DNA of 64,000 bases from Podarcis liolepis (taxonomy: Eukaryota), in the NCBI GenBank assembly GCA_965112155.1, contig OZ218112.1; one strand, written 5' to 3'. The notes below the pieces were generated by a model, which was not told the origin of the DNA, ran no database searches, and worked only from the letters and a program-made list of their open reading frames with translations. Below, one piece after another: positions 930 to 54,100 of the stretch. The position numbers and the translations under genes were made by a program. Every line of letters begins with the position of its first letter. The first letter of the stretch is position 1.

Positions 930-1106
930 TGTTGTTGTTTAGTTGTTTAGTTGTGTCCGACTCTTTGTGACCCCATGGACCAGAGCACGCCAGGCACTCC
1001 TGTCTTCCACTGCCTCCTGCAGTTTGGTCAAACTCATGCTGGTAGCTTCGAGAACACTGTCCAACCATATCGTCCTCTGCCGTCCCCTTCTCCTTGTGCC
1101 CTCCTT
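930..1106 (-). mobile_element. Bov-B (RTE LINE) 5'-truncated 3' end
   Basis: Reverse complement reads ...CCATGGGGTCACAAAGAGTCGGACACAACTAAACAAC(AAC)n; 10-bp TSD gtgcaatcct at 920-929 and 1107-1116. Confidence 0.85.
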
Positions 1107-1177
1107 GTGCAATCCTACTTGTGTTTATTTGGAAATAAGAGTCATTGTGTTTAAGGTGGCTTACTGCCTAGCAAGTC

Positions 1178-1822
1178 ATTACTGGCCCCAACAACATCAC
1201 ACATACCATCTCGGGACTATTTAATTGCTCATCGTCTAACATTGTGTATGCCATCAAATGCCAACAGTGTCCTTCAGCTCTCTATATTGGACAAACAGGC
1301 CAAACCTTACGCCAAAGAATAAACGGACATAAATCTGACATCAAGAATCACAGAACAGAGAAACCAGTAGGAGAACACTTCAATCTCCCAGGACATTCTA
1401 TACAAGATCTCAAAGTAGCTGTTTTACTACAAAGGAATTTCAGAAACAGACTGGAAAGAGAAGCTGCTGAATTACAACTCATTACCAAACTTAAAACCAT
1501 GAAAAGACCTGGGCTTAACAAAGACATTGGATTCTTATCTCACTATACATAACTAAACCATTTCTCACCTTCTCACCCCTTGCCTTTTCCTGTAAGACCT
1601 ATTACAGTCGTTAAGAGTCGTCAATAGGCTCTCCCAGCTATCTGCCTATCTCCCATTCCCACCATCCTTCTGAGTAACACCCCTCCCCACCTTCTCACTA
1701 TATAGAAGGATCTGGCAACTTCTATTTCAGTGTATCTGAAGAAGTGTGCATGCACACGAAAGCTCATACCAAGAACTAACTTAGTTGGTCTTTAAGGTGC
1801 TACTGGAAGGAATTTTTTATTT
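1178..1822 (+). mobile_element. Penelope-like retroelement, 5'-truncated: GIY-YIG endonuclease region plus 3' UTR
   Basis: ORF 1244..1552 (YAIKCQQC..LYIGQTGQTLRQRINGHKSDIK...E.QLI...GLN) is a PLE-type GIY-YIG domain; 13-bp TSD tgcctagcaagtc at 1165-1177 and 1823-1835. Confidence 0.9.
1732..1769 (+). ncRNA. Minimal type I hammerhead ribozyme motif in the Penelope-like element
   Basis: gtat-CTGAAGA-a-gtgtgcatgcacac (stem II)-GAAA-gc-TC-atac: conserved CUGANGA/GAAA core, stem I gtat/atac, predicted cleavage after C1765. Confidence 0.8.
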
Positions 1823-9600: not shown

Positions 9601-12600
9601 TGCACTAATGGTATTACAAAAAGAAAAAAATATAGAATGCTGCACGCGCATCATGGTTTCCTCCACATGTTGGGAACCAGCAACTGTAGCTCTGAGTACT
9701 TTCTTTGCATGCAGAATGTCCCAAGTTCAATCCCTGCCATCTCCAGGTAGGCCTGGGAGAGACGCAAGGTCTGAAACCCTGGTGAGCCACTGCCTGTCAG
9801 TGTAGGCAAACTAGATGGACCTAGTGGTCTGACTCAGCGAAAAGCGATTGCCTATATTCCTCCATGTGGTAACCTTGCCCTCTAGCACCAGATATGCAAA
9901 ACTGGCAAATAACCTTTGGCCTCAAATGGTTTGTAGTTAAATTTTAGCCACTGGGGTGTAGCAGTTAGAGCACTGGACCTGGGAAACTAGAATTCAAATC
10001 CCCGCTCAGCCACAAAGATGACCTTGGGCCAACTGCTATCTTACAACCTAACCTACCTACCTACCTACCTCACAGGGTTGTTATGAGGGTAAAATTGGAC
10101 AAAAGGAGAGAACCACGTATGCCACCTTGAGCGTTTTGAGGAAAGGTGGGATATAAATGCAACTATTAATAAATGACACCCAGTGCAAACTTTAAACAGG
10201 AAGGGAGCTAACCCAGCCTACCTTTGTGACCCATTCCGTGTGCCCTGTTAGTGTATTGAGACACACTCCCGTTGATAAGGCCCAGACCTTCACAGTGAAA
10301 TCCGCTGAGCCACTGACCAGGATGTCGAGCTCGTCATTGTAATCAACACTGAAAACTACAAAAGCCAAAAAAGAAAAGGGAACTTTAAAAGAGATTGGCC
10401 ATGCTGATCTCTATACCAAGTCAGATCAAAGTAATCATGCAGTTATTTTGGGATGTGCGTGTGTGCAATTGTGAGTCACACTGCAGTTATACTGATTTGG
10501 CTTCCTTGAAATTTAGAGTTTTCCCTTCCATGTAATAGACGTGTAGAATTTACAAGTTTGGAAGGATAGCCAGGTAAACATACTTAGGTAATGCCTACCC
10601 AATGATTAGAGCTAGAGAACTGCAGCCAGGGGAGGGGGTTCCCTTGCCTAGAAAGCTGTCTTATTCTGGGCCAGGCTATTGGTTCATGTAGCTCAGGACT
10701 ATCTGCATGAGTTGGCAGCGGCTCTCGAGGGTTTCAAACAGGGAGTTTCTCCCAGCCATATCTGGCATGTGTGACAGAGACTTGGTTAGATGAGGCAGAT
10801 GGGCCTGTTCTTGTCGCTGCTTGTCCACCAGGTTTCTCTTATACACAGCAACCCATGTCATATGGGTGGGGTTGCAGTGAATTTTAGGAAACCATTAGCT
10901 TACATCAGGCGTCCTGTTGGGAAAACCCAGTTTTCTGAGTGCATGTTCTGGAAGTTGGGCAATACAGGCAGTACAGGATTCCTTTTGGAGTACCGACCTC
11001 TCCACTGCACCAAGATTCCCTGCCTGAGCTGCCTCAGGTCATGGTGGATGTTCTCCTGGAGTCTACCTCTTTCCAAATCTGAGTGACTTTATCTGCAAAA
11101 ACAGCTTTGCAAACTCATTGCAGGAGACCTTTTTGCAGATAAAGTCACTCAGATTTGGAAAGAGGTAGAGTCCACCATGGGAGCAGGGCCGGGAGAGTGC
11201 TAGAGTCCTTTCTGGTCAAGTTGCATGGGATCAATTCCAATCTGTTACCTCCAAGGATGTGGACAGGCTGCTTGGACAAGTGAAACCAACCACCTGTCCC
11301 CTTGCCGATCCTGGCTAATAACAGTGAGCTGGGAAGGGCTGGCTGATGGGCTCTGGGGGCTGGTGAGTGCTTCCCAGATCCGCTGAAAGAGTGGCCGCTG
11401 AGACCATATAACACTGGTCCTGAAAGACCTACATTGGCTCCCAGTATGTATCCAAGCACAATTCAAAGTGTTGGTGCTGACCTTTAAAGCCCTAAATGGC
11501 CTAGGCCCAGTATCCCTGAAGAAGCATCTCCATTCCCTTTGCTCAGCCCGGACACTGATGTCCAACTCCTAGGTGGTTCCCTCCCTGCAAGAAGTGAGAT
11601 TACAGGGAACCAGGCAGTAGTGGCGCCCGCCCTGTGGAACGCTCTCCCAGCAGATGTCAAGGAAATAAACAACTACAGTGGTGCTTCGCAAAACGAAAAG
11701 AATCCGTTCTGTGATTCTCTTCGTCTAGCGGTTTTTTCGTCTTGCGAAGCAAGCCCATTGACGGATTAGCGCTATTAGCGGCTTATCTGCTGATCGGATC
11801 AGCTGATCAGCGGCTTAGAAAAAGGGAGGAGGGGAAAAAACCCGCAGGAACTCACAAGGCATTGTCGCCTTGCGAAGCAAGCCCATAGGAAATTCATTTT
11901 GCAAAGCACCTCCAAAACGGAAAACTCTTTTGTCTAGCGAGTTTTCCGCCTTGCAAGGCATTCGTCTTGCGGGGCACCACTGTATCTGACTTCTGGAAGA
12001 CATCTGAAGGTAGCCCTGTTTAGGGAAGTTTTAAATGTTTTATGTTTGGTTGTGTTTTTAATGTTCTGTGGGAGCCGCCTAGAGTGTCTGGGGAAACCCA
12101 GCCAGGTGGGTGGGGTATAATTAATTAATTAATTAATTAATATTATTATTACTATCTAGCAATGCCAGGAACTGAACCAGAGACCTTCTACATGTAAAGC
12201 CCATGCTAGAGTCAGTCCCAAGCAACATGGAACGGTGTAGAGTTCTGGTTGCTTCATCTCAGAAAGGATTTTATACAGTTGGAAAAGTTTCAGAAAAGGA
12301 CAACTAAAATGATCAAGGGGATGGAGCAACTCCCATGAGGAAAGGCTGCAACATTTGGAACATTTTAGTTTAGAGAAAAGGCAGGTAAGACCTTATAGAA
12401 GTTTACGAAACTATGCATGGGGTGGACAAAGTAGATAGAGAAGTTTTTCTCCCTCTCTCGTATCAGGAAGTTGCACCTGCTGTGGACAGTGATGGCCACC
12501 AATTTAGATGGCTTTGAAAGAGGATTCGACAAATTCATGGAGGAAAATGCTCCAAATTCATGGAGGAAAAAGTCCTGTTTGGCCACTGTGAGAACAATAT

Positions 12601-15600
12601 GCTGGACTAGATGGGCAACTAGCCTGATCCAACATGGAGAGTGAGTAGGGTAGCTGCCAAACTAGGGGAGATGTCTAGCAAGGCTAGATTGCAGACAGAT
12701 GTTGCTTGAAATGGCCTAAAGGGCTTCAGGCATTCCTGAGGACACCAACACACCTGCCCCCGTGTGGCCTCTGAAGTGCTGGGTCTTAGTTCCTGAGCTC
12801 CACTCCCAGCAGGCTACCGTGTTGTCAAAGGAGCCTGTGACCAGCTTTTGTTCATCAAACTTCACTGCTGCACAGGTGTGGGTCTGGATCCCATAGATGC
12901 ATTGCCCTGTGCTCACATCCCATAGCTTTGCAGACAAGTCATCTGAACCTGCGGCCGCAAAGGAAGAAATGAAGTGTGGTTTAGTGGCTGAGAAGTCAGA
13001 AGGTATCCAACATGACCCACAAAACAATGGCATCCAACCAGGACCTGGGAGAATTGAGTTCAGATCAGCCATAGTTTCACTACTTGGCCAGCCACTACTT
13101 AAGCTTCTCAGTGACCCATCTAGAAAGAGCCACTGGTTAGAGTCTGTCTCATTGTTTCCCAAACATCTGATCAAAATTTGGAGGCCTATTTTTTTAACAC
13201 CTGAAACTGTTTTACTTTCATAACAAATGAAAAGAAAAATAACCCATTCAAAAAGGAGTGTGTCCTCAGTGTTTCTGTATTAGTACTCGTTCCACTCTGA
13301 TCCCAAGGCATGCCTAGACCAATGGCTCATACATAAATGCAACAGGGCAAATTGGGTGGAGAGGGCAAGTCTGCCACAAAAGAGTGCCTTGAATAATCTG
13401 ATCATCCCTAAAACCACAGTGCATAATTACCTACCCAGGGGCTGAATGGAAGGAGGGAAAGTTGAGCACTCAATCGCACACAGAGACACAAAGGGCAGTC
13501 TTCTATTCAGGCAAGTTATTGGGCACATGGGAATTGGCACTTTAGCTGTTCTTCTATAACTTGGAAATTATTGGCACAAGAAAGCATTAAAGTTGTGATG
13601 TCAAACTTTCTTAAAAAGGTATCTGAGATCCCCCCCACCCCAATTTTACAATGAAAAAGTAAACCCTGCTGACAGCTCTCTGCTCCCAAAAGTACCCCGC
13701 CATGATATTATTCTGCTGAAAATTTTCTGTGATCTCCCCCAAGTTCCCTCAAAATTGATCTATTATTTCTGTGCCACGCTCACTTTGATAAGTGGCCCCT
13801 GGAGGATTGCACATAGGTCAATGCAGCCCTTGGCCCAAAAAAGGAAAGACATTCCTGCTTTAAAACTATTTTGAATATCTTGGGGGGGGGGGATATCTGC
13901 TTGGCATTTAAAAATAAAACAAGCTTCTAGTTCTTATGCATGCAGGAGAAAACTCAGAAATATATCCATGCCTTTCCTGTCATTGACAAGGATTTCCAAG
14001 CCTGAGTTTATGATGCAGAACAAGTGAGCGCAATTAAGCAAACAAGAATGCAGATACACTTGTGGCACATAATTGATTCCAACTCAATCATTTTGATTTG
14101 GGAAGAGAAGTGATTGGTGCAGAACAGAAAGTCCTAGTCATGCAAAATCATTAGCCTCCAATAGTGGAAGATGAAGGTTTTGGTCACACGTTATAGGATC
14201 TGTGACAATTAACTCTCGCTAGTAGGAAGTCTCAAAGGATTAAAAACTTTGGCTTGCAAATAAATCCTTCACTTTTCCAGACAGAAATGATTGTTTATAT
14301 TAGGTCAGCTGCTTTTTGTATAAACAAATCAATGCTGCCTGTCCCATTGCGGCCCTTTCATTAATGGATAATTTGAGCATTTGGTTTTAAGCCCCACCCT
14401 ACCACCAAAAAGCCACCCTCACAGGGAGATCCACACTCCACAGCAGATCCATGGTAGGGGAATTTGTAGGGAAGACTGGTGTGAAGCCAAAGGAGCAGCC
14501 TCCTCCTCAGAATGTATTGTAGGTTTTAGAATGCTGAAGAGGCCTTTCTTTAATATTAGCACACATTGGCTGTGTTCAAACATCACAATAAACTATGGTT
14601 AACACAATAGCAACAAGATTAGCCTACTCCTAGGCTCATATGCTCTGCACTCTGGTGCAAGGAAACTGGAAATTTTTGCTGCTTATTAGCCAGAGTTTAG
14701 CATGACACATGAACTCTAAAGTGCGGCTACACATAATTTCTGTGGAAACATGCCAACTTTATAAACAGTGGTCTGATGCTGGTTTGTTGCAACATAGTAA
14801 AAATGAATCACAGTGTATTGGGTTTCTACAAGATGGCAAGCTGCAGTTAAATAGAAGCAAAAGCTTTGAAGCTTGTCCTTGAATCTGTCAGTGGAGACCA
14901 GGCAAGCTTGGGGAGGGGCACCAGGCTTGTTCCTATCACAACAAACCATAGCTTATTGTAGTGTAGCATACAGACACTGCATGCTTTTATGAAATACATT
15001 TCTACAATGTTAGTGAAAGCTTGTGGCTAGAACAAGGTCTGGGATCCGTGGGGCCTGATCATGGCCTATGGTGAGCTGTGAATGACCAAATCTCCTATTC
15101 AGATCTTGGTCTTGCTATAACGTCACTAAGCAGCTTTAGACAAGCCTTCCAGCCTCAGCCCACTCCATGAAGCTGAATATTGGAAGAACCAGGACAAATA
15201 AAAAAAAGTACTATTTCATGTGGTGAATAGTTGAACTATGGCACTTGCTGCCACAGGAGGCAGTGGTGGTCACCAACTTGGGATGCTTTCAAAAGAGTAG
15301 ACAAATTCATGGAGGAAAAGGTTCAAAATAGCTATGTTCTGCCTCCACAGTTGAAAGCAATAAAGCATCAGGATACCAGCTGCTGGAAACCTCAGGAGAG
15401 GAGAGCGCTCTTGTGCTTGAATCCTGTCCATGTGTATCCTGCAAGCATCTGGTTGGCCACTGTGAGAAGATGGACTAGATGGGCCATAGGCCTGTTCCAG
15501 CAGGGCTCTTCTTATATATATGCCACCTCCCAGTAATATTACTTACTCTGGCAATTTATATACAGGCAACTTCCCAAGTGTGTGGGGGTTGCATTCCGGG

Positions 15601-19698: not shown

Positions 19699-20277
19699 GT
19701 GACTTCCTGGCTCGCAGCCCTCTCACACACATACACAACACTAATTCTCATTGCACCACTACACCCAAGCCATTTGGGCCATCCTACCTGTACAAAGAAG
19801 TCCATCTTTATAGTAAAGTGCGTACACTCTGGCACTGTGTCCAATCAGTGAGGAGGTCTCAAAGGCTTTGTGGTCCTCTAGTTGCTTCATCCTTAAGATG
19901 GCCTTTAAGTACACCTTCTTCCAGTGCAAAGCATCTTGGACAGAGTCATCAATCTGCCAGCCCAGTTTCCTACAGGCAGTCTGCCACACCTCCATACAGG
20001 CACTTATGACCTTGTTCCATTGCTTAGAGACGAGGCAGCACGTGAGTAAGGTCTGAGGGTCAAGCCATTTTAACAAATAAAAACTGAGTTCCAACGGGAG
20101 GAGTTTGAGGAAGTCCCGTTTGAGGAGGGTCTCTAGGTTATTGGAGAGGTGCCTGAGCTGGATAGCCCCACTCAAGCTAATCAGGTGATCCAACGACTCA
20201 TTTTTCTGCAAGTCCGTCAGAGAGAGAAACGTAACAGAAATATTATCAAGCCATGCTTCAAAGTCCTTTCTCTCCAT
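6396..20277 (-). CDS. FBXW2: F-box/WD repeat-containing protein 2 (whole spliced CDS, 6 coding exons, 454 aa)
   Basis: join(complement 19788-20277, 12754-12948, 10222-10355, 8971-9057, 7736-7905, 6396-6684) = 1365 nt. All introns are GT-AG with consistent phases. N-terminus [15 protein letters not shown]-box ([28 protein letters not shown]), WD40 repeats, C-terminus LVLWKEHG match vertebrate FBXW2. Confidence 0.97.
7590..7680. repeat. Compound microsatellite (TA/TG)(GA)n(GAG)n
   Basis: Direct reading. Confidence 0.85.
7736..7905 (-). CDS. FBXW2: FBXW2 coding exon 5 ([16 protein letters not shown]...[10 protein letters not shown])
   Basis: Within ORF 7732..8055; tacag| acceptor, AG|gtaaac donor; 170 nt. 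Confidence 0.95.
8971..9057 (-). CDS. FBXW2: FBXW2 coding exon 4 ([29 protein letters not shown])
   Basis: Manual translation; cag| acceptor, AAG|gtatgt donor; 87 nt. Confidence 0.95.
10222..10355 (-). CDS. FBXW2: FBXW2 coding exon 3 ([25 protein letters not shown]...GHTEWVTK)
   Basis: Manual translation (absent from ORF track); tgtag| acceptor, AAG|gtaggc donor; 134 nt. Confidence 0.95.
10770..12120 (+). mobile_element. Internally deleted L2 (CR1 clade) LINE
   Basis: Endonuclease remnant (GGVAVNFRK...LLEYRP), RT C-terminal remnant (LHWLPV..QAQFKVL), L2-like 3' end with AT microsatellite tail. Confidence 0.7.
11676..11982. mobile_element. Tigger-like MITE nested in an L2 3' end
   Basis: TA-CAGTGGTGC...GCACCACTG-TA; L2 sequence resumes on both sides. 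Confidence 0.82.
12754..12948 (-). CDS. FBXW2: FBXW2 coding exon 2 (WD40: [12 protein letters not shown]...FRGHTGA)
   Basis: Within ORF 12716..13174; gcag| acceptor, G|gtgtgt donor; 195 nt, phase 1/1. Confidence 0.96.
15563..15717. mobile_element. Short Tc1/mariner-type MITE
   Basis: TA-CAGGCAACTTCCCA...TGGGAGTTGCTTG-TA. Confidence 0.65.
16320..16735 (+). mobile_element. CR1 LINE RT fragment
   Basis: [32 protein letters not shown]...[11 protein letters not shown], with stops. Confidence 0.85.
17420..18090 (-). mobile_element. Decayed non-LTR retrotransposon fragment (APE endonuclease N-terminus)
   Basis: Minus strand reads [12 protein letters not shown]...[10 protein letters not shown]; clade not assignable by eye. 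Confidence 0.55.
18225..18900 (+). mobile_element. Decayed L2 3' fragment
   Basis: [15 protein letters not shown] and LHWLP-like remnants with frameshifts. Confidence 0.7.
18929..19582. mobile_element. Tc1/mariner-type non-autonomous element nested in L2
   Basis: TA-CAGGCA...TGCCTG-TA with imperfect TIRs; accounts for spurious ORF 18912..19556. Confidence 0.65.
19667..19696. repeat. (AATC)n microsatellite
   Basis: Direct reading. Confidence 0.9.
19788..20277 (-). CDS. FBXW2: FBXW2 coding exon 1 (start codon, F-box); exon begins at 20297
   Basis: ORF 19759..20277; acceptor cccacag|GTAAAT at 20297; donor ACAG|gtagga at 19788. Confidence 0.96.
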
Positions 20278-22990: not shown

Positions 22991-23619
22991 ATGTATGTGA
23001 CTGAAGCTTTAAACTGCCTTAAAGTGCCTTTTGGTGAGTATTTTTTAAACACTTAAGAATTATTATTATTCTAAATATAGGGTGGAGGGGAGGGCAGCAT
23101 TTAACAAATAAATGGGAGAGATGATGTTAGTGGGGGTGAGGTATAAAGTAGATAGCATGCCTCATGGGTATTTTTTTCTTTCAAGTTGGGTCTTGATGTG
23201 GAATCAGAAAAGTGGATTGCTTTTATAATCTTTGGCCACAATACAACAAAGAGTTGAGCACACCTAAATTTGCACTGAACTATTGCCATTTATTTCAAAG
23301 GACTGGGTCTGTACAACTGTGCATTAGTGCATTAAGATCAAAATGTAATAATAATAATACGTCTCCCATAAAAGAGCACACACACAAGTGGCATGGAAAA
23401 CACTCTTTATCAGCCTATGCTCTTAGGTTTCTGGATCTGATTCTGGAGACGAAGGATGGGGGAAGGGACATAGCTCAGTAGTAGAGCATCTACTTTGCAT
23501 GCAGATGATCCCAGGGGACCTGCCCATCTTGAGTTAGGGCTGGGACTGTCCCATGCCTGAAGCCCTGGATAAGTGTAGTTGGTGTGGCAATACTGAGCTG
23601 GATGGACTAATGGTTTGGG

Positions 23620-23951
23620 CAGGGGTCTGCAACCTTTAAGACAAAAAGAGCCACTTGGACCCGTTTTCAAAGAAAAAAAAACCTGGGAGCCGCAAAACCA
23701 TTGCGACATTTAAAACAAATATATCTCCGGAGCCGCGATCTGACAGCAGGCGGGAAGGTGACGTCGGGACGGTGCGTGACTAACGCACGCACCGCCCCCA
23801 TGCGACATCACAGCCAGTACAGCGCCCGTCACAGTGGGGAGTGTCGGGGCGCACAATGCGCCTCCTCCCCTCGCTAGTATCCGCCCCAGAGCCGCGGCAA
23901 AGGTGTAAAAGAGCCACATGCGGCTCCGGAGCCGCGGGTTGCAGACCCCTG
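23620..23951. mobile_element. hAT-type MITE nested in a tRNA-derived SINE
   Basis: 15-bp perfect TIR CAGGGGTCTGCAACC; 8-bp TSD ggtttggg at 23612-23619 and 23952-23959; CpG-rich. Confidence 0.9.
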
Positions 23952-24041
23952 GGTTTGGGCATAAAGCAGCATCTTATGTTCCTACTGTTGTCTGGGAAGC
24001 AATCCATGCATTTGATGTTTTTATAGAGCTAGATTTTAACA

Positions 24042-24112
24042 AGTGCCTGGCGTGCTCTGGTCCATGGGGTCACGAAGAGTCGGACACGACTAAACGACTG
24101 AACAACAACAAC
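24042..24112 (+). mobile_element. Bov-B (RTE) short 3' tail insertion
   Basis: CCATGGGGTCACGAAGAGTCGGACACGACTAAACGACTGAAC(AAC)n; 11-bp TSD agattttaaca at 24031-24041 and 24113-24123. Confidence 0.85.
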
Positions 24113-24281
24113 AGATTTTAACAGGTCAGACTATTTCTCTAGCCCAGTCTATGCTGACTGGTGGTAGCTCCCTAGAAAGGAAGACCCCTTCCACCACCTG
24201 ATATATGATTTGTTTTTCTTTTAAGGTAATTATGACAGCATTCAACCTGTCTAGAACATTCTACATCCAAAGCATATAGTA

Positions 24282-24460
24282 GATAGGTAGCCGTGTTGGT
24301 CTGCCATAGTCAAAATAAAAAATTCCTTCCAGTAGCACCTTAAAGACCAACTAAGTTAGTTCTTGGTATGAGCTTTCGTGTGCATGCACACGAAAGCTCA
24401 TACCAAGAACTAACTTAGTTGGTCTTTAAGGTGCTACTGGAAGGAATTTTTTATTTTGAC
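24282..24460. mobile_element. Fold-back (palindromic) Penelope-like 3'-end insertion
   Basis: 24378-24458 is identical to 1744-1824; perfect inverted repeat 24309-24460; direct repeat ccaaagcatatagta at 24267-24281 and 24460-24474. Confidence 0.88.
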
Positions 24461-24749
24461 CAAAGCATATAGTACAACTACATTTGATGCTGGCCAAGGG
24501 ATCCCGCTTCAGGACACACCTGTGACCGGATAGTGTTCACACGTGAAATTTGCCTCTGAAAAGCCTGGGGTGGGGAAAACCCCCATGCTAACTAGTTCAA
24601 TATCGGAGAACAAGAACAGCCATATGCGACATGCAGAGTCTTGTGGCATCAGCTGGGCGGTCTTCCAGGTGTTACTAGACTACAATTCCCCTCATCCCTA
24701 GCTAGCAGGACCATCCAGCGACACCTGGGGAGGGACCTGAGGTTGGGAA

Positions 24750-25870
24750 AGGCTGAGCTAGAGTGTCGCACCCGTGCCCGCGAGACCAGGATTCAAACAA
24801 CCATTTGCACATGAAGCCAGCTGCCCAGTGGGGATAAAACGGGGAAGGGGAGAATACGCTGATCTCCCGGGAATAAAGGAAGGGTGTAAATAGGATAATA
24901 CATAATAGCTAAGAATCAAAACACGACGCCGATCCATCATTCTGCACCCCCTTACCCCCTTCTCAATCCCGGGCCCTCCCGCAACCTCTTTTGCACCTAC
25001 CTCAACGGAGACCTCTCCTCAACTTCACCCCAAAGGGCGCAAGTCTCCCCTTCCACCCGCCCCGCCCCCTCAGCCCCCCTCCCCACTGCAGGCGGTCTCT
25101 ATGACAACCCACCTGAGCCCCGCCCCCTTCCGCCGCTCTCCTCAGCCGCGCTCCCTCCTCCCACCGCACTGTCCCTCTTTTCTTCCCGCCCCCTCCCGCC
25201 CACTTTATTTTTCGGGGGCGGGGGGTCCAACCTTTCGCCGCCGGGTCCCAGCAAACACTCTACCACAGGCACTTCCGGCGTGAGCACCTGACGTCATCTT
25301 CCTCGCGCCTCTTTCCCGCCCCGGATTTTAGAGTCACTTCCGTCCGGAAACGGAAACTTTTTTAAAAGTCTAACTTAATGTACCCATAGAGATAGAAAAG
25401 TAGAGCATTTTCTGAACCACCGATATAAAATGTGAACGGTGACACCATTGGACATGATTCTCTTGCACTGCTACAAAGTCTCTCGAAATTCTCTCTAGAG
25501 ACCGACGGCCCTCCAATGCTCTGTACAGCATTGGAAAACCAGTTGAAATTGAGAACGGGAGTTGCCATTGTGTATTGTTGACGATGTGTGGCTCTTCATT
25601 TTCCTATATCTTTGTTTTTTTCCCTTTCTCCTTCCAGGGCACAAGAGAGGCTGAGCCGGAAGTACAATCACATGGGGGAAAGGATTTAATCGTCTGAGTT
25701 TCTGGTCCGTTGTTATTTTCCTCTCTACACTGAAAACGTGGTCCCAACTGTTTAGTTCCGCCTTGCATTTGATTCTCAAGATTGTAGTTGCCAGCTTTAA
25801 TTTGGAGGTGAAGTGGGATGCTTTAGTCCTTGGACGGAAAGGGAAGGTGAGTTTGCGCCGCCCAAAGCCT
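24750..25870. promoter_or_regulatory. CpG island / probable bidirectional promoter of FBXW2 and SLC2A8
   Basis: High CpG density; ETS/GABP-type motifs ACTTCCGG 25271-25278, ACTTCCG 25336-25342, CCGGAA 25344-25349, CCGGAAGT 25656-25663; full CRE TGACGTCA 25289-25296; GC boxes. Confidence 0.75.
25001..25280 (-). other. FBXW2: Probable non-coding first exon(s) of FBXW2
   Basis: GC-rich region with minus-strand donors GAG|gtaggt (exon end 25001) and CAG|gtgggt (exon end 25113), just downstream of ETS/CRE motifs; TSS position is approximate. Confidence 0.6.
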
Positions 25871-37900: not shown

Positions 37901-38765
37901 CTGTCAATGAGTTCACTTTCTCCTTCCTCTGCAACCTACAGGCTTTGCCTTGGGCTGGGGCCCGATCCCATGGCTGTTGATGTCTGAAATATTCCCTCTC
38001 CGAGCTCGAGGCGTAGCCAGTGGTGCCTGCGTCTTAACAAATTGGCTCATGGCTTTTCTGATCACCAAGGAGTTCCATGACCTCATGGTAAGCAAGGATC
38101 ACAGCAGAACAGTTTACAGCAGGAGTGGGAGCAGTGGCCCCCATTTTCTTTTCAGCAACCTTCTGGGGGCCACATGCCAGTGGCAAAAATGGGTTGTTGT
38201 TCTTTTTGCCTACCATATGCAAGGATCCTGCTAGGGTGAAAAGCGGTAACCACGTTGTGACGTAGCCAGTGGAAGGACTAGGAGTCTCGGCTGCTTTTGC
38301 GACAGAGTTCTCATGCTTACTGAGAGCATCAGCCTGTGTCTGCAGTTACTACAGACATGCTAGGTTTCTGCATGCAGGGATATTCTGGATGAGAAAACAT
38401 TCTCTTATGTTGGGCATGGGGAACCTTTGGCCCTCTGGATGTTGCTGAAGTACACCTCCCATGAGCCCTAGCAAGTGTGGCTGATAGCCAGGGATAATGT
38501 AAGTTGTCATTCATCTACACTTAGAAGGTCAAAGGTTCCCCATTTGCCATCTCAAGAGTACAGCTCAACCACCTTGGTACTGCTTCTGGTTCTTAATCAG
38601 ACATCTCTTTCTCTTCTGCCCCAGGTTTTCCTGACGCCTCATGGTACTTTCTGGTTGTTTTGTGCCATGTGTTTCTCCAACGTGCTCTTTACCATACTCT
38701 TCGTTCCTGAAACCAGAGGGAAAAGCCTAGAAGAGATAGAGGCCTACTTCCAAAGATCACATTAG
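28846..38765 (+). CDS. SLC2A8: Solute carrier family 2 member 8 (GLUT8), whole spliced CDS, 10 coding exons, about 495 aa
   Basis: join(28846-28931, 30920-31082, 32242-32448, 32854-32953, 33718-33929, 35129-35275, 35542-35650, 35998-36174, 37942-38087, 38625-38765) = 1488 nt. Sugar-porter motifs DKFGRK, YISEIA, PETPR, QQxSGIN, GWGPIPW, PETRG; N-terminal dileucine ETRPLL and loop-9 NSS sequon typical of class III GLUT8. An in-frame upstream ATG at 28837 would add MGD. Confidence 0.95.
29817..30045 (-). mobile_element. Sauria SINE, 3' half
   Basis: Reverse (ACCTTT) tail and body homologous to the other copies. Confidence 0.75.
30920..31082 (+). CDS. SLC2A8: SLC2A8 coding exon 2 (TM1)
   Basis: [33 protein letters not shown]...ASWFG; tgcag| and GGG|gtaagt; 163 nt. 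Confidence 0.95.
31372..31700 (+). mobile_element. Sauria SINE
   Basis: Full length; 13-bp TSD gtatagagacata at 31359-31371 and 31701-31713. Confidence 0.88.
32242..32448 (+). CDS. SLC2A8: SLC2A8 coding exon 3
   Basis: [11 protein letters not shown]...DKFGRK...SLVVP; 207 nt, GT-AG. Confidence 0.96.
32854..32953 (+). CDS. SLC2A8: SLC2A8 coding exon 4
   Basis: [33 protein letters not shown]; 100 nt. Confidence 0.96.
33102..33327. mobile_element. Tc1/mariner (Tigger-like) MITE
   Basis: TA-CAGTGGTACCTC...GAGGTACCACTG-TA. Confidence 0.88.
33718..33929 (+). CDS. SLC2A8: SLC2A8 coding exon 5
   Basis: [12 protein letters not shown]...MPETPRFLL...NAEGQ; CAG|gtaagt donor; 212 nt. Confidence 0.95.
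34108..34450 (+). mobile_element. Sauria SINE
   Basis: Full length; 12-bp TSD cctcctggtata at 34096-34107 and 34451-34462. Confidence 0.88.
35129..35275 (+). CDS. SLC2A8: SLC2A8 coding exon 6
   Basis: [20 protein letters not shown]...[23 protein letters not shown]; 147 nt. Confidence 0.95.
35542..35650 (+). CDS. SLC2A8: SLC2A8 coding exon 7
   Basis: [36 protein letters not shown]; 109 nt; manual translation. Confidence 0.95.
35998..36174 (+). CDS. SLC2A8: SLC2A8 coding exon 8
   Basis: [27 protein letters not shown]...[14 protein letters not shown]; NSS sequon at 36066-36074; 177 nt. Confidence 0.93.
37642..37859. mobile_element. Tc1/mariner (Tigger-like) MITE
   Basis: TA-CAGTGGTACCTCGGGTTA...TAACCCGAGGTACCACTG-TA. 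Confidence 0.88.
37942..38087 (+). CDS. SLC2A8: SLC2A8 coding exon 9
   Basis: [48 protein letters not shown]; 146 nt. Confidence 0.96.
38625..38765 (+). CDS. SLC2A8: SLC2A8 last coding exon
   Basis: [12 protein letters not shown]...[20 protein letters not shown]. Confidence 0.96.
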
Positions 38766-51100: not shown

Positions 51101-54100
51101 AATGAGGGAACCGCCAGAAGGCCCTCGGAGAAGGATCTCAGTGTCCGGGCTGAACGATGGGGGCGGAGATGCTCCTTCAAGTATACAGGACCAAAGCTAT
51201 TTAGGGATTTAAAGGTCAGCAACAAAACTTTGAATTGTGCTAGGAAATGTACTGGGAGCCAATGTAGATCTTTTAGGACCAGTGTTATATGGTCCCGGTG
51301 GCAGCTCCCAGTAACCAGTCTGGCAGCCGCATTCTGGATTAATTGTAGTTTCTGAATCACCTTCAAAGGTAGCTCCACATACAGCACATTGCAGTAGTCC
51401 AAGCGGGAGATAACCAGAGTATGTACCAATCTGGCAAGACAGTGTGCGGGCAGGTAGGGTCCAAGCTGGTGTACTAGATGGAGCTGGTAGACAGCTGCCC
51501 TGGACACTGGTGCCCTTGGCTTGTGCCTCCATGGACAGCTGTGAGTCCTTTAGGGCCACAGTTACTCCATTCAGGACCAGGGAGTCCCCCCACCTGCCCG
51601 CCCCCTGTCCCCCAGAAACAGTACTTCTGTTTTGTCGGGATTCAACCTCAATCTGTTGACTGCCATCTACCCCTCCCCCCAACCGCCTACAGACACCCAC
51701 ACAGGATGTTCACTGCCTTCACTGGTTCTGAATTAAAAGAAAGGTAGAGCTGGGTATAATTCGCTTACTGGTGAACACCCAGCCCAAACCCAGCGGTTTC
51801 ATATAGATGTTAAAAAGAATGGGGGAGAGTTTGGAGCCCTGGGGCACCCCACAAGTGAGCGCCATGGGGTTTGAACATTAATCCCCCACCACTACTTTCT
51901 AGACACAATCTAGGAGGAAGGAGCAAAACCATTGCCCCCAGCCCTCCTAGTTGGCCCTGGAGGATACTGTGGTTGACAGTATCAAAAGCTGCTGAGAGAT
52001 CCAGCAGAACCAGGAAACAGCTTTCATCTCTGTCCCTAGCCCATCAGAGATCATCAACCAGCATGTCCAAGGCAGTTTCAGTCGCATGGTGGAGCCTAAA
52101 ACCCGACTGGAAGGGGTTTAAATAGTCCACATCCTCCAGGTGTGCCTTATTGATTTATTATTTTTATTATTTTTCTAATTTGTTATTTTTTTCCTTACCA
52201 CACTGTATTACAAAAGTAATATTGACTGAAGCATAAACATAAATTAAACCCTTCCCCCCCTTGAATAGTATTTCAAATTACATTCCTTGAACAGTATTTC
52301 AAATTACATTTCTTAAAGTATTCTACAAAAAGGATTAAGAATCTTCTATGTAACGTAATATTTGATCTACTATAATATATAACACTATTTTTTCCTTTAT
52401 AGTGTTCATTGTTTTCTATAACCTATAAGTAAAACAAATGACTCCATTAATTAGATCCACATTTCATTTTTCTTAATTCACCTAATCCTTCTTCAACTGA
52501 TCCTATACTCCCTTAAAAAGACCAAACGATTTTATATGAAGTTAGCACTCTTCTGCCAGATTTATTTATTTATTTATTTAACAAAATTTATATACCACTT
52601 GAATGCAAAACAAAGCAAAACCTCTAAGCAGTTTGCAAAAATTTAAAATAAAACATTAAGATTATCCATTTAAAAACTAGTTTAAAAAATAGGTATTTAC
52701 AATATGGTTAAAAACAGCAATAGCTAAAAAGAAATAAAACAAAAGAAATAAAACATGTAACATCTATGCATCTGAATTGGCTTAGCTAAAAAACCACAAC
52801 ATTTTACACATTTAATTGGTGAATCACACAAATCAGTTAATTTCACTGCAGATGATAGCAAGGCAAATAACTCCAGTTTTGGTGGAAGATGACAGCAGTG
52901 GAACAGAAGCAGCACTGCATGCAATGAACACAGAATGGAAAAATATGCCTTCCTATCTCCCTAAGTCCGACATTGTGCAGATTTGGGATAAAAGGACAGT
53001 TTCAAGCCCAAAAAGTTTGAAGACTGATGCTTTAGCTCAGCCTTTTTCAACCTGTGGGTCCCCAGATGTTGTTGAACTACAACTCCCATCACCCCTAGCT
53101 AGCAAGGCCAGAGCTCAGGGATGATGAGAATTGTAGTTCAACAACATCTGGGGACCCACAGATTGAGAACCACTGCTTTAGCTGAACATACTACAGAAGC
53201 AACAAATTCCCAGTTGGCCTCAGCCCCTTCCTTACCTTCTGTTGCGGAAGGAGAGAAAACAGGGATTTCATTGACTGATGGTGTCTGAGGGGTAGTAGGT
53301 GAATTAGTCTCCTTGGAACTGCCGTTGGATGGCTCGCTCACTGCCGTTACGGCTCTGAAGTAGATATCTGACTGGAAGGAGAAAGAGGCTGTGTTAGCAA
53401 AGTGGACTTATCTGAAGCTATGGGTTGTCACTGTGGTACCCGTGTGCCCACAAACATCTCCAATGGCACCAACAAAAAGGAAACCCCAAGGTTTGTATAA
53501 GTACCAAAATGTTTGTCCAGGGAGGGATACCTTGGGCAGCAATGAGGGCAAAATAGGTCAGTGGGGACAGAGGATACTCAGTGAGCACAGAATGCTGTCT
53601 GGCAGTTATGGAGAAAACCCAGAAAAGTGAGTTGAAGTGGGAATGGAATATCATGGGAAAGAGCATGGCCAGCTGGCCGGCAGCTTGAACAGGAATATCA
53701 CACAGCAAAGTTTTGTTGCATGTCCCGCTTGTTTAGTGGGCTTATGGGTTAAATGATGCAGTCTTAATATGAAACACAGGGTCCCTTCCAACTCTACAAT
53801 TCTATGGTTCTGCCTTTGTAGTGCTAGAAGAGGCATGTCTAGAAGAAGAGGAATTTTGCACAGGAAACCAGACTTCTTATCTCACTGCCTTACCCTTGAT
53901 GCCACCAGCTCAAGCGCAGGGACCACAGCTGTGTGGACGAGGTTCCCATTCACCACTAATCTGATCTCAATGGAATCGGTGGTGAAGGCCAAAATATAGG
54001 GGAAAGCGCAAACTGTAGGAGACAAAAGCATTTAATGAAGAAATAAATGCAACATGGTATATGATGGGCTTCTCTGCACATGTTGTCAGTCCTAAGCATC

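What the first reader, a model, noticed from the sequence alone, without database searches (positions are those of the whole stretch)
24267..24474. Perfect spacer-less 152-bp palindrome formed by a Penelope element folding back at its ribozyme stem II, in FBXW2 intron 1
Seen: 24309-24460 is a perfect palindrome (76-bp arms, no spacer) centred in GTGTGCA|TGCACAC, the hammerhead stem II of the element at 1.7 kb. The right portion is identical to 1744-1824. The left arm carries a further 27 nt (24282-24308), probably more element tail. The unit is flanked by a 14-15-bp direct repeat (ccaaagcatatagta). The CUGAAGA half of the core is absent, so this copy should be catalytically dead. Inference: the nascent cDNA snapped back or switched template at the ribozyme palindrome, suggesting the hammerhead hairpin seeds the inverted structures known in PLE insertions. 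It lies about 550 bp inside FBXW2 intron 1 next to the CpG island, so it could form a DNA cruciform and a 76-bp perfect dsRNA hairpin in pre-mRNA (potential ADAR/Dicer substrate).
Basis: partly seen in the sequence, partly recalled or inferred. Interest (0 to 1): 0.8.

Follow-up and report, generated by a model that had tools for sequence, protein, structure and literature searches.

The report
Abortive head-to-head Penelope retroelement insertion
A very young 178-bp stump of a Penelope-like jumping gene, made of two mirror-image copies of the element's end joined exactly at a self-complementary ribozyme stem, sits in an intron of an F-box/WD40 gene of a lizard; this layout is already known for these elements, so it is a neat but ordinary case.

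Summary
24309-24460 is a perfect, spacer-less 152-bp palindrome. Its centre lies inside GTGTGCA|TGCACAC, which is helix II of a Penelope-like element's minimal hammerhead. It is flanked by a 15-bp target-site duplication, and one arm carries 27 extra bases.

Contigs from four other sequenced individuals (four studies) all show the exact empty site with a single copy of the duplicated 15-mer. So this is a real, recent insertion that is private or polymorphic. No read of the filled allele was available.

The copy at 1178-1822 is a 5'-truncated Penelope-like element. It has a GIY-YIG endonuclease ORF end, a complete minimal hammerhead and its own 13-bp duplication.

Head-to-head inverted copies, a 30-40-nt tail at one end only, and palindromes at the inverted junction are all already published for this class. 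The two outer ends lie 110 and 82-83 nt after the start of helix II. That matches the two internal reverse-transcription start sites mapped in the Anolis element PAc.

I therefore favour target-primed cDNAs from both DNA strands annealing at the 14-nt palindrome.

The scan has noted at least four, possibly five, similar helix-II-centred palindromes elsewhere in this genome; I did not check them. The ADAR/Dicer and cruciform ideas remain untested. The gene name FBXW2 is plausible but not proven by a tool.

The parts
24267..24281 (.). Left copy of the 15-bp target-site duplication CCAAAGCATATAGTA
   Evidence: Exact direct repeat. The contigs of four other runs hold a single copy and no insert (table 8, records 3, 12, 17, 23).
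24282..24308 (-). 27-nt optional 'tail' of the Penelope-like element, AC-rich (read on the minus strand: ...UAUGGCAGACCAACACGGCUACCUAUC). It is present on the left arm only.
   Evidence: It lies beyond the perfect palindrome. In run X12, 12 contigs with unlike, AT-rich flanks break off exactly at 24281/24282 (table 7), so this is a regular terminus of the family. A tail of 30-40 nt at one end only is described in PMC8557442. It lies between the two RT start sites in PMC11167929.
24309..24384 (-). Left arm. Minus-strand copy of the element from the middle of helix II to the tail-less boundary (76 nt).
   Evidence: Perfect reverse complement of 24385-24460.
24378..24391 (.). Junction. A single copy of the 14-nt self-complementary hammerhead helix II, GTGTGCATGCACAC, shared by both arms.
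   Evidence: It is the longest perfect palindrome in the 645-nt sister copy. As DNA, the hairpin scores -2.4 kcal/mol and the homodimer -18.9 kcal/mol.
24385..24460 (+). Right arm. Plus-strand copy of the element from the middle of helix II to the tail-less boundary. The last base is shared with the duplication.
   Evidence: Identical to 1751-1824 of the sister copy. It ends 82-83 nt after the start of helix II, against 79-81 nt for the sister copy.
24460..24474 (.). Right copy of the 15-bp target-site duplication
1178..1822 (+). Sister copy. A 5'-truncated Penelope-like element made of the GIY-YIG endonuclease ORF end (1244-1552), the untranslated pseudo-LTR part, a complete minimal hammerhead (about 1732-1769) and a tail-less end. 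It is flanked by the 13-bp duplication TGCCTAGCAAGTC (1165-1177 and 1823-1835).
   Evidence: Duplication. ORF. Pfam GIY-YIG PF01541, E 5.9e-06, 26.9 bits against a cut-off of 22.6. Core motifs read.
19786..20277 (-). First coding exon of the host gene (F-box), which places the insert upstream of it on the transcribed strand
   Evidence: Pfam F-box-like, E 1.3e-08. PDB relatives are FBXW7, FBXW1A and FBXW8. Splice acceptor cccacag just before it. The Atlas lead 'F-box/WD repeat-containing protein 2-like' scores 0.87.

Best explanation
This is a dead-on-arrival mini-insertion of a very abundant, recently active Penelope-like retroelement.

Proposed steps at integration:
1. The element's endonuclease cut both strands of the target about 15 bp apart.
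2. Each free 3' end primed reverse transcription on element RNA at one of the element's two internal start sites. The top strand used the site after the 27-nt tail. The bottom strand used the tail-less site.
3. Both cDNAs ran back through hammerhead helix II.
4. Two cDNAs of the same polarity can pair with each other only at a self-complementary stretch. They annealed in register at the 14-nt helix II palindrome.
5. Each cDNA was then filled in on the other.

The product is a spacer-less head-to-head palindrome with one copy of helix II at its centre, a tail at one end only, and a 15-bp duplication.

Shown here: the structure, the duplication, the empty allele, the identity of the element, and the positions of the ends. 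Inferred: priming on both strands, annealing of the two cDNAs, and the order of events.

The insert has no working ribozyme and most likely no function. As RNA it would form a 76-bp perfect hairpin.
For: - **Structure and duplication:**
- **Empty site:** an exact empty site with a single 15-mer in four runs of four studies.
- **Element identity:**
- **Outer ends:** they lie 110 nt and 82-83 nt after the start of helix II. The independent copy at 1178-1822 ends at 79-81 nt. In PAc of Anolis the ORF starts at helix II, the tail spans about nt 85-119, and RT starts at 111-118.
- **Both-strand activity:** PAc protein cleaves and extends both strands, with the same start sites on both.
- **Tail:** a tail at one end only is the usual layout.
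- **Palindrome:** helix II is the longest perfect palindrome of the 645-nt copy. A 14-bp duplex between two cDNA ends scores -18.9 kcal/mol, against -2.4 for the hairpin.
- **Abundance:** depth over the insert is 3-13e5 against about 10-20 in the flanks, so the family is hugely abundant.
Against: - No read of the filled allele was seen. The individual that was assembled is apparently not among the runs, and the flanks differ by about 1.3-1.6%.
- Priming on both strands is shown only in vitro, and for a different Penelope family whose sequence is not alignable to this one.
- Nothing here shows why both cDNAs should reach helix II and go no further; flap trimming or pausing has to be assumed.
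- The tail boundary has also been ascribed to endonuclease resolution of an intermediate. That could give the same short arm after a snap-back.
- The end-position argument rests on one sister copy plus positional analogy with PAc.
Confidence: 0.5

Rival explanations
1. Snap-back self-priming. A single target-primed cDNA started after the tail and copied the RNA through helix II. Its 3' end folded into the GTGTG-CATG-CACAC hairpin and copied itself for 76 nt. It was then joined to the other target end.
For: - Palindromes at inverted junctions of these elements were read as self-priming in PMC3846280.
- The hairpin is possible at -2.4 kcal/mol and is intramolecular.
- The product at the centre is identical to what is seen.
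- The right junction has at most 1 nt of overlap, compatible with end joining.
Against: - The self-copy must stop 27 nt short of its template's end. It must stop just where an independent copy of the element ends and where PAc has its second RT start site. That is roughly a 7-in-103 coincidence if the stop is random.
- The hairpin is weak.
- The hairpin must be opened again for second-strand synthesis.
Confidence: 0.3
2. Retro-copy of an existing palindromic source. A genomic head-to-head copy was transcribed through, and the hairpin RNA itself was reverse transcribed. The several 140-156-bp palindromes in this genome would then be one small non-autonomous family.
For: The scan notes list at least four, possibly five, further loci with very similar palindromes. 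The arms are identical to each other and to the sister copy.
Against: - The 5' end of such an RNA would have to fall exactly on the complement of the canonical tail terminus.
- The reported lengths differ (140, 146, 148, 148, 152, 156 bp).
- PAc needs about 172 nt of the ORF start for activity in vitro, and only 83-110 nt are present here.
- RT would have to melt a 76-bp perfect RNA duplex of -141.6 kcal/mol.
Confidence: 0.08
3. Not made at integration. Either an assembly fold-back artefact, or a later DNA-level fold-back duplication (a replication template switch at the 14-nt palindrome) of an ordinary truncated insertion.
For: No read of the filled allele was available. Perfect palindromes are hard to assemble, and PMC8557442 notes assembly problems with these structures.
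Against: - An artefact does not create a 15-bp duplication of unique target DNA around a repeat fragment whose two outer ends are regular element termini.
- The empty site is exactly as the duplication predicts.
- A later duplication would have had to replace the original right end and still abut the duplication precisely.
Confidence: 0.05

Closest known systems
[quoted passage not shown] 2021, PMC8557442)
   Same: Inverted 5'-truncated copies abutting head to head. A tail at one end only. A variable target-site duplication. A hammerhead in the pseudo-LTR region. A GIY-YIG endonuclease in the parent element.
   Different: Here both copies are truncated to 76-103 nt, so nothing but the palindrome is left. 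The tail is 27-31 nt, slightly below the quoted range.
Palindromes at the inverted junction of rotifer Penelope elements, interpreted as self-priming (Arkhipova et al. 2013, PMC3846280)
   Same: A short natural palindrome of the element sits exactly at the inversion point.
   Different: In that paper the palindromes (18 bp, 38 bp) are at pseudo-LTR 5' ends and are not linked to the ribozyme. Here the palindrome is hammerhead helix II. I found no paper that makes that link, though the held library is incomplete.
PAc (Poseidon of Anolis carolinensis) in-vitro integration (PMC11167929)
   Same: The architecture matches: helix II at the start of the unit, two internal RT start sites about 30 nt apart bounding the tail, an AC-rich last segment, and cleavage and extension of both target strands.
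   Different: It is a different family with no alignable sequence. In this family the ATG inside helix II opens only 9 codons. That paper did not report head-to-head products.
Twin priming of L1 (Ostertag and Kazazian 2001; cited from my own knowledge)
   Same: Both free 3' ends of a staggered target cut prime reverse transcription. The two cDNAs are joined at complementary bases, giving an inversion flanked by a duplication.
   Different: In L1 the second primer anneals further 5' on the RNA, so the two parts are different segments. Here both arms are the same segment, so the product is a true palindrome.
Minimal dimeric hammerhead of Penelope-like elements (Cervera and de la Pena 2014, PMC4209133)
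   Same: The sister copy fits the description. Helix I is 4 bp, there is an unpaired base before helix II, a G10.1-C11.1 pair, no helix III, and palindromic positions 15.2-16.2.
   Different: The palindromic insert has helix II, GAAA and the cleavage-site side on both strands, but no CUGANGA box. It is not a ribozyme.

Membership tests
Penelope-like element insertion | GIY-YIG endonuclease at the C-terminus of the element's ORF | tested here: met
   In the sister copy, 1244-1549 matches PF01541 at E 5.9e-06, 26.9 bits, above the cut-off of 22.6. The palindromic insert itself is too short to carry it. The link is 81 of 81 identical bases.
Penelope-like element insertion | Telomerase-like reverse transcriptase domain | not tested
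   Both copies in the window are 5'-truncated downstream of it, and no full-length copy could be fetched.
Penelope-like element insertion | Hammerhead motif in the pseudo-LTR region, next to the start of the unit | tested here: met
   GTAT-CTGAAGA-A-GTGTGCATGCACAC-GAAA-GC-TC|ATAC at 1732-1769, fitting the published min-HHR features. Rfam does not score it.
Penelope-like element insertion | Inverted 5'-truncated copy head to head, with the optional tail at one end only | tested here: met
   Arms of 103 and 76 nt; a 27-nt extension on the left arm only. Compared with PMC8557442 fig. 2 legend.
Penelope-like element insertion | Target-site duplication and a matching empty site | tested here: met
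   15-bp duplication. Contigs of X1, X3, X12 and X8 run from 24266/7 straight on to 24460/1.
Active hammerhead ribozyme (the palindromic insert) | Both conserved core boxes: CUGANGA, and GAAA with the cleavage-site UH | tested here: not met
   No CTGANGA on either strand of 24267-24474. GAAA and GCTC|A are present on both strands.
Active hammerhead ribozyme (sister copy at 1.7 kb) | Self-cleavage | not testable with these tools
   Sequence features are complete, but published motifs of this minimal type cleave only as dimers and weakly. In PAc, cleavage needs the protein.
L1-type twin-priming inversion | The inverted part is a different, more 5' segment of the same RNA | tested here: not met
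   Both arms are the same 76 nt.
Penelope inverted junction with a palindrome (self-priming class of PMC3846280) | A natural palindrome of the element lies at the inversion point | tested here: met
   The centre at 24384|24385 is the centre of the 14-nt helix II, which the uninverted copy also has at 1744-1757.
FBXW2 intron 1 (host context) | The insert lies between a non-coding exon 1 and the first coding exon of an orthologue of FBXW2 | tested here: inconclusive
   F-box and WD40 exons on the minus strand. An acceptor before the ATG exon. A CpG island at 24950-25350. An Atlas lead to an FBXW2-like cluster at 0.87, below its own 0.9 level. Exon 1 was not mapped. I did not run the large protein search for a side issue.

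The most novel reading that the evidence does not exclude
The unusually long, perfectly self-complementary helix II of Penelope hammerheads may be kept for a role as DNA as well as in the ribozyme. It would be the docking site where the two cDNAs primed from the two target strands anneal to close an integration. That would make it the preferred inversion point of the class. It would also help explain why ribozyme cleavage is dispensable for insertion in vitro.
Probability: 0.1. Interest if true: 0.7.

Novelty: new member of a known kind. Interest (0 to 1): 0.3.

Why it matters
On its own this is one more abortive insertion of an abundant retroelement in an intron.

Its value is as a clean, minimal specimen: two arms, both outer ends at regular reverse-transcription start boundaries, one tail, an exact empty allele, and the junction at the only long palindrome of the region.

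If a genome-wide count confirms that such junctions pile up at helix II and that tail and no-tail ends combine freely, it would give in-vivo support for priming on both target strands by Penelope-like elements. So far that has been seen only in vitro. It would also give a simple rule for where their puzzling inverted structures form.

For genome annotation, perfect palindromes of this size are likely to be unstable and hard to assemble. They deserve a flag.

Tried and rejected
- **Rfam:** nothing for any hammerhead model, either at gathering threshold on the whole window or at E up to 10 on 1600-1900. The motif has no helix III, so this is uninformative.
- **Other copies in the window:** BLAST of the element against the window and a scan for inverted repeats found no further Penelope copies. 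Junction statistics could not be made here.
- **Metagenome scan:** the diagnostic 22-mer TTTCGTGTGCATGCACACGAAA gave one hit, a GC-rich bacterial contig with an unrelated 32-nt palindrome. It is a chance match.
- **Scan index by sequence:** blank, which means nothing according to the operators. A search with too many words was also blank.
- **Tail RNA fold:** the fold of 24282-24369 (minus strand) is not better than shuffles, z -0.94. I make no claim about a start-site stem-loop in this family.
- **Gene name:** PDB and Atlas searches reach only the family level.
- **Rejected readings:** an assembly artefact, a later DNA-level duplication, and a working or switchable ribozyme in the insert. Reasons are given under the rival explanations and the membership test.
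- **Reads:** the one read-laying run returned contigs only, so it cannot show RNA ends, editing or small RNAs.

Full report
**The observation**

24309-24384 and 24385-24460 are perfectly complementary 76-nt arms without a spacer; the first mismatch comes at arm position 77. The centre falls in GTGTGCA|TGCACAC (24378-24391). That 14-mer occurs only here and at 1744-1757 in the window. From the start of that 14-mer, the right side equals 1744-1824 for 81 of 81 bases. CCAAAGCATATAGTA flanks the unit at 24267-24281 and 24460-24474. The left arm runs 27 nt further, to 24282. No other perfect palindrome in the 64 kb exceeds 22 nt, and those are simple repeats.

**What the element is**

The copy at 1.7 kb can be delimited by a 13-bp duplication, TGCCTAGCAAGTC, at 1165-1177 and 1823-1835. 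It spans 1178-1822.

- Its 5' part is the end of an ORF (1244-1552) that matches the GIY-YIG catalytic domain above Pfam's cut-off (E 5.9e-06).
- An untranslated stretch follows, then GTAT-CTGAAGA-A-GTGTGCATGCACAC-GAAA-GC-TC|ATAC.
- This fits the minimal hammerhead of Penelope-like elements described in PMC4209133. That description has a short helix I, an unpaired base before helix II, a G10.1-C11.1 pair, no helix III, and palindromic positions 15.2-16.2.
- Rfam's hammerhead models do not score it, which is expected without helix III.

So the name 'Penelope-like' and the label 'stem II' both hold. The insert at 24.3 kb has no CUGANGA box on either strand and cannot be a ribozyme.

**Is the insertion real?**

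I laid Logan contigs of four DNA runs from four studies on 23300-25500. One run carries species label A and three carry label B. In each run, one contig lies on 24072/24086-24266/7 and continues directly at 24460/1 (table 8, records 3, 12, 17, 23).

- The insert is therefore a true insertion. It is younger than the split between the assembled individual and these four, or still polymorphic.
- The flanks differ from the window by about 1.3-1.6% (tables 3 and 8). The runs may be another population or a sister taxon.
- I saw no read of the filled allele.
- An assembly artefact is still unlikely. It would not duplicate 15 bp of unique target around a repeat fragment whose outer ends are regular element termini.
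- Depth over the insert is 3-13e5 against 10-20 in the flanks, so the family is extremely abundant.
- Loose ends at 24378 and 24391 read on into AGTGTATCTGAAGAA, so ordinary copies carry the whole core (table 7).

**What is already known**

- PMC8557442 describes the standard layout. It consists of strong 5' truncation, partial tandems, and an inverted 5'-truncated copy head to head. A 30-40-bp tail is often present at one end only.
- PMC11167929 shows several things for PAc of Anolis:
  - The protein cleaves and extends both target strands.
  - Reverse transcription starts internally at two sites.
  - The tail is the stretch between those sites (about nt 85-119, counted from the ORF start at helix II).
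  - Ribozyme cleavage is not needed for insertion.
- I found no paper that ties the inversion point to hammerhead helix II. The library is incomplete.

**Mechanism**

Counted from the start of helix II, the left arm ends at nt 110 and the right arm at nt 82-83. The independent copy at 1.7 kb ends at nt 79-81. In run X12, 12 contigs with unlike AT-rich flanks break off at 24281/2 (table 7). So both outer ends of the palindrome are regular termini, and they correspond in position to the two start sites of PAc.

- The top-strand 3' end at 24281 would prime the left arm's cDNA. The bottom-strand 3' end at 24460 would prime the right arm's.
- Two cDNAs of the same polarity can pair only at a self-complementary stretch. 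The 14-nt helix II is the longest one in the 645-nt copy; the next is CTATATAG.
- As DNA it gives a 14-bp duplex of -18.9 kcal/mol between two ends, against -2.4 for the hairpin.
- Annealing in register and mutual fill-in gives exactly the observed product.

I put this at about 0.5.

But it needs the self-copy to stop 27 nt early at the tail-less boundary, then an end-joining step with at most 1 nt of overlap. I put it at about 0.3. It is not excluded, because the tail boundary has also been ascribed to endonuclease resolution. A retro-copied hairpin RNA gets about 0.08, and a later DNA-level event or an artefact about 0.05.

**Recurrence**

The scan's own notes list further spacer-less palindromes 'centred on' or 'folded at' helix II in other pieces of this genome. 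They measure 148, 148, 140 and 146 bp, and one of 156 bp has no stated centre. Other Penelope palindromes there have their centres elsewhere, at sizes of 89, 96, 192, about 760 and 3356 bp.

These are unchecked first-reader notes. If they are right, the short arms (70-78 nt) cluster at the tail-less boundary, which fits the model. Earlier follow-ups of related loci judged them ordinary head-to-head insertions, and I agree for this one.

**Host context**

- F-box (E 1.3e-08) and WD40 exons lie on the minus strand at 19786-20277, 12740-12955 and 10216-10350.
- The ATG exon is preceded by a splice acceptor.
- A CpG island (observed/expected 0.87, GC 0.65) lies at about 24950-25350.

But exon 1 was not mapped. 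The name FBXW2 rests on an Atlas lead at 0.87 and on my memory of the human protein. I ran no further search on this side issue.

As RNA, the insert folds into a 76-bp perfect hairpin at -141.6 kcal/mol. Whether it is edited, diced or extruded as a cruciform is untested. All four other individuals examined lack it.

**Verdict**

This is a known kind of structure and a neat minimal example, with a modest mechanistic hint that a genome-wide count could test.

Noticed in passing
window 23612-23959: A 332-bp element (23620-23951) has 15-nt terminal inverted repeats, CAGGGGTCTGCAACC / GGTTGCAGACCCCTG, and an 8-bp duplication GGTTTGGG. The interior is CpG-rich (observed/expected 0.98). It is very high-copy, and all four other runs skip it exactly (23611 to 23952). 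It looks like a second young, hAT-type miniature DNA transposon only 330 bp from the Penelope insert. Part of what looks like a CpG island here is this element.
   Followed up: partly
window 24040-24113: This stretch has the highest depth of the laid region, 2.7-8.4 million. It ends in (AAC)n, and many contigs break off on both sides. From memory it resembles the 3' end of BovB/RTE-type LINEs of squamates. The ORF at 939-1112 (minus strand) looks like the same kind of element.
   Followed up: no
window 23300-25500: The unique flanks differ from the contigs of all four runs by about 1.3-1.6%, plus several small indels, under both species labels. The assembled individual seems to belong to a lineage not represented among the served runs.
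   Followed up: no
window 1750-1779: In this family the ATG inside helix II opens only nine codons before TAA. In PAc of Anolis the long ORF starts at helix II. Either the ORF starts elsewhere in this family, or the abundant copies belong to a non-autonomous derivative.
   Followed up: no
window 53044-53169, 38416-38543, 11057-11174: Three other short inverted-repeat units with arms of 45-57 nt and spacers of 14-28 nt. They are probably miniature DNA transposons unrelated to the Penelope family.
   Followed up: no
L001 7017-7048: A bacterial-looking GC-rich metagenome contig carries a perfect 32-nt palindrome, GGGCATTTCGTGTGCA|TGCACACGAAATGCCC. By chance it contains the 22-mer I searched for. 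It is unrelated to the finding.
   Followed up: partly
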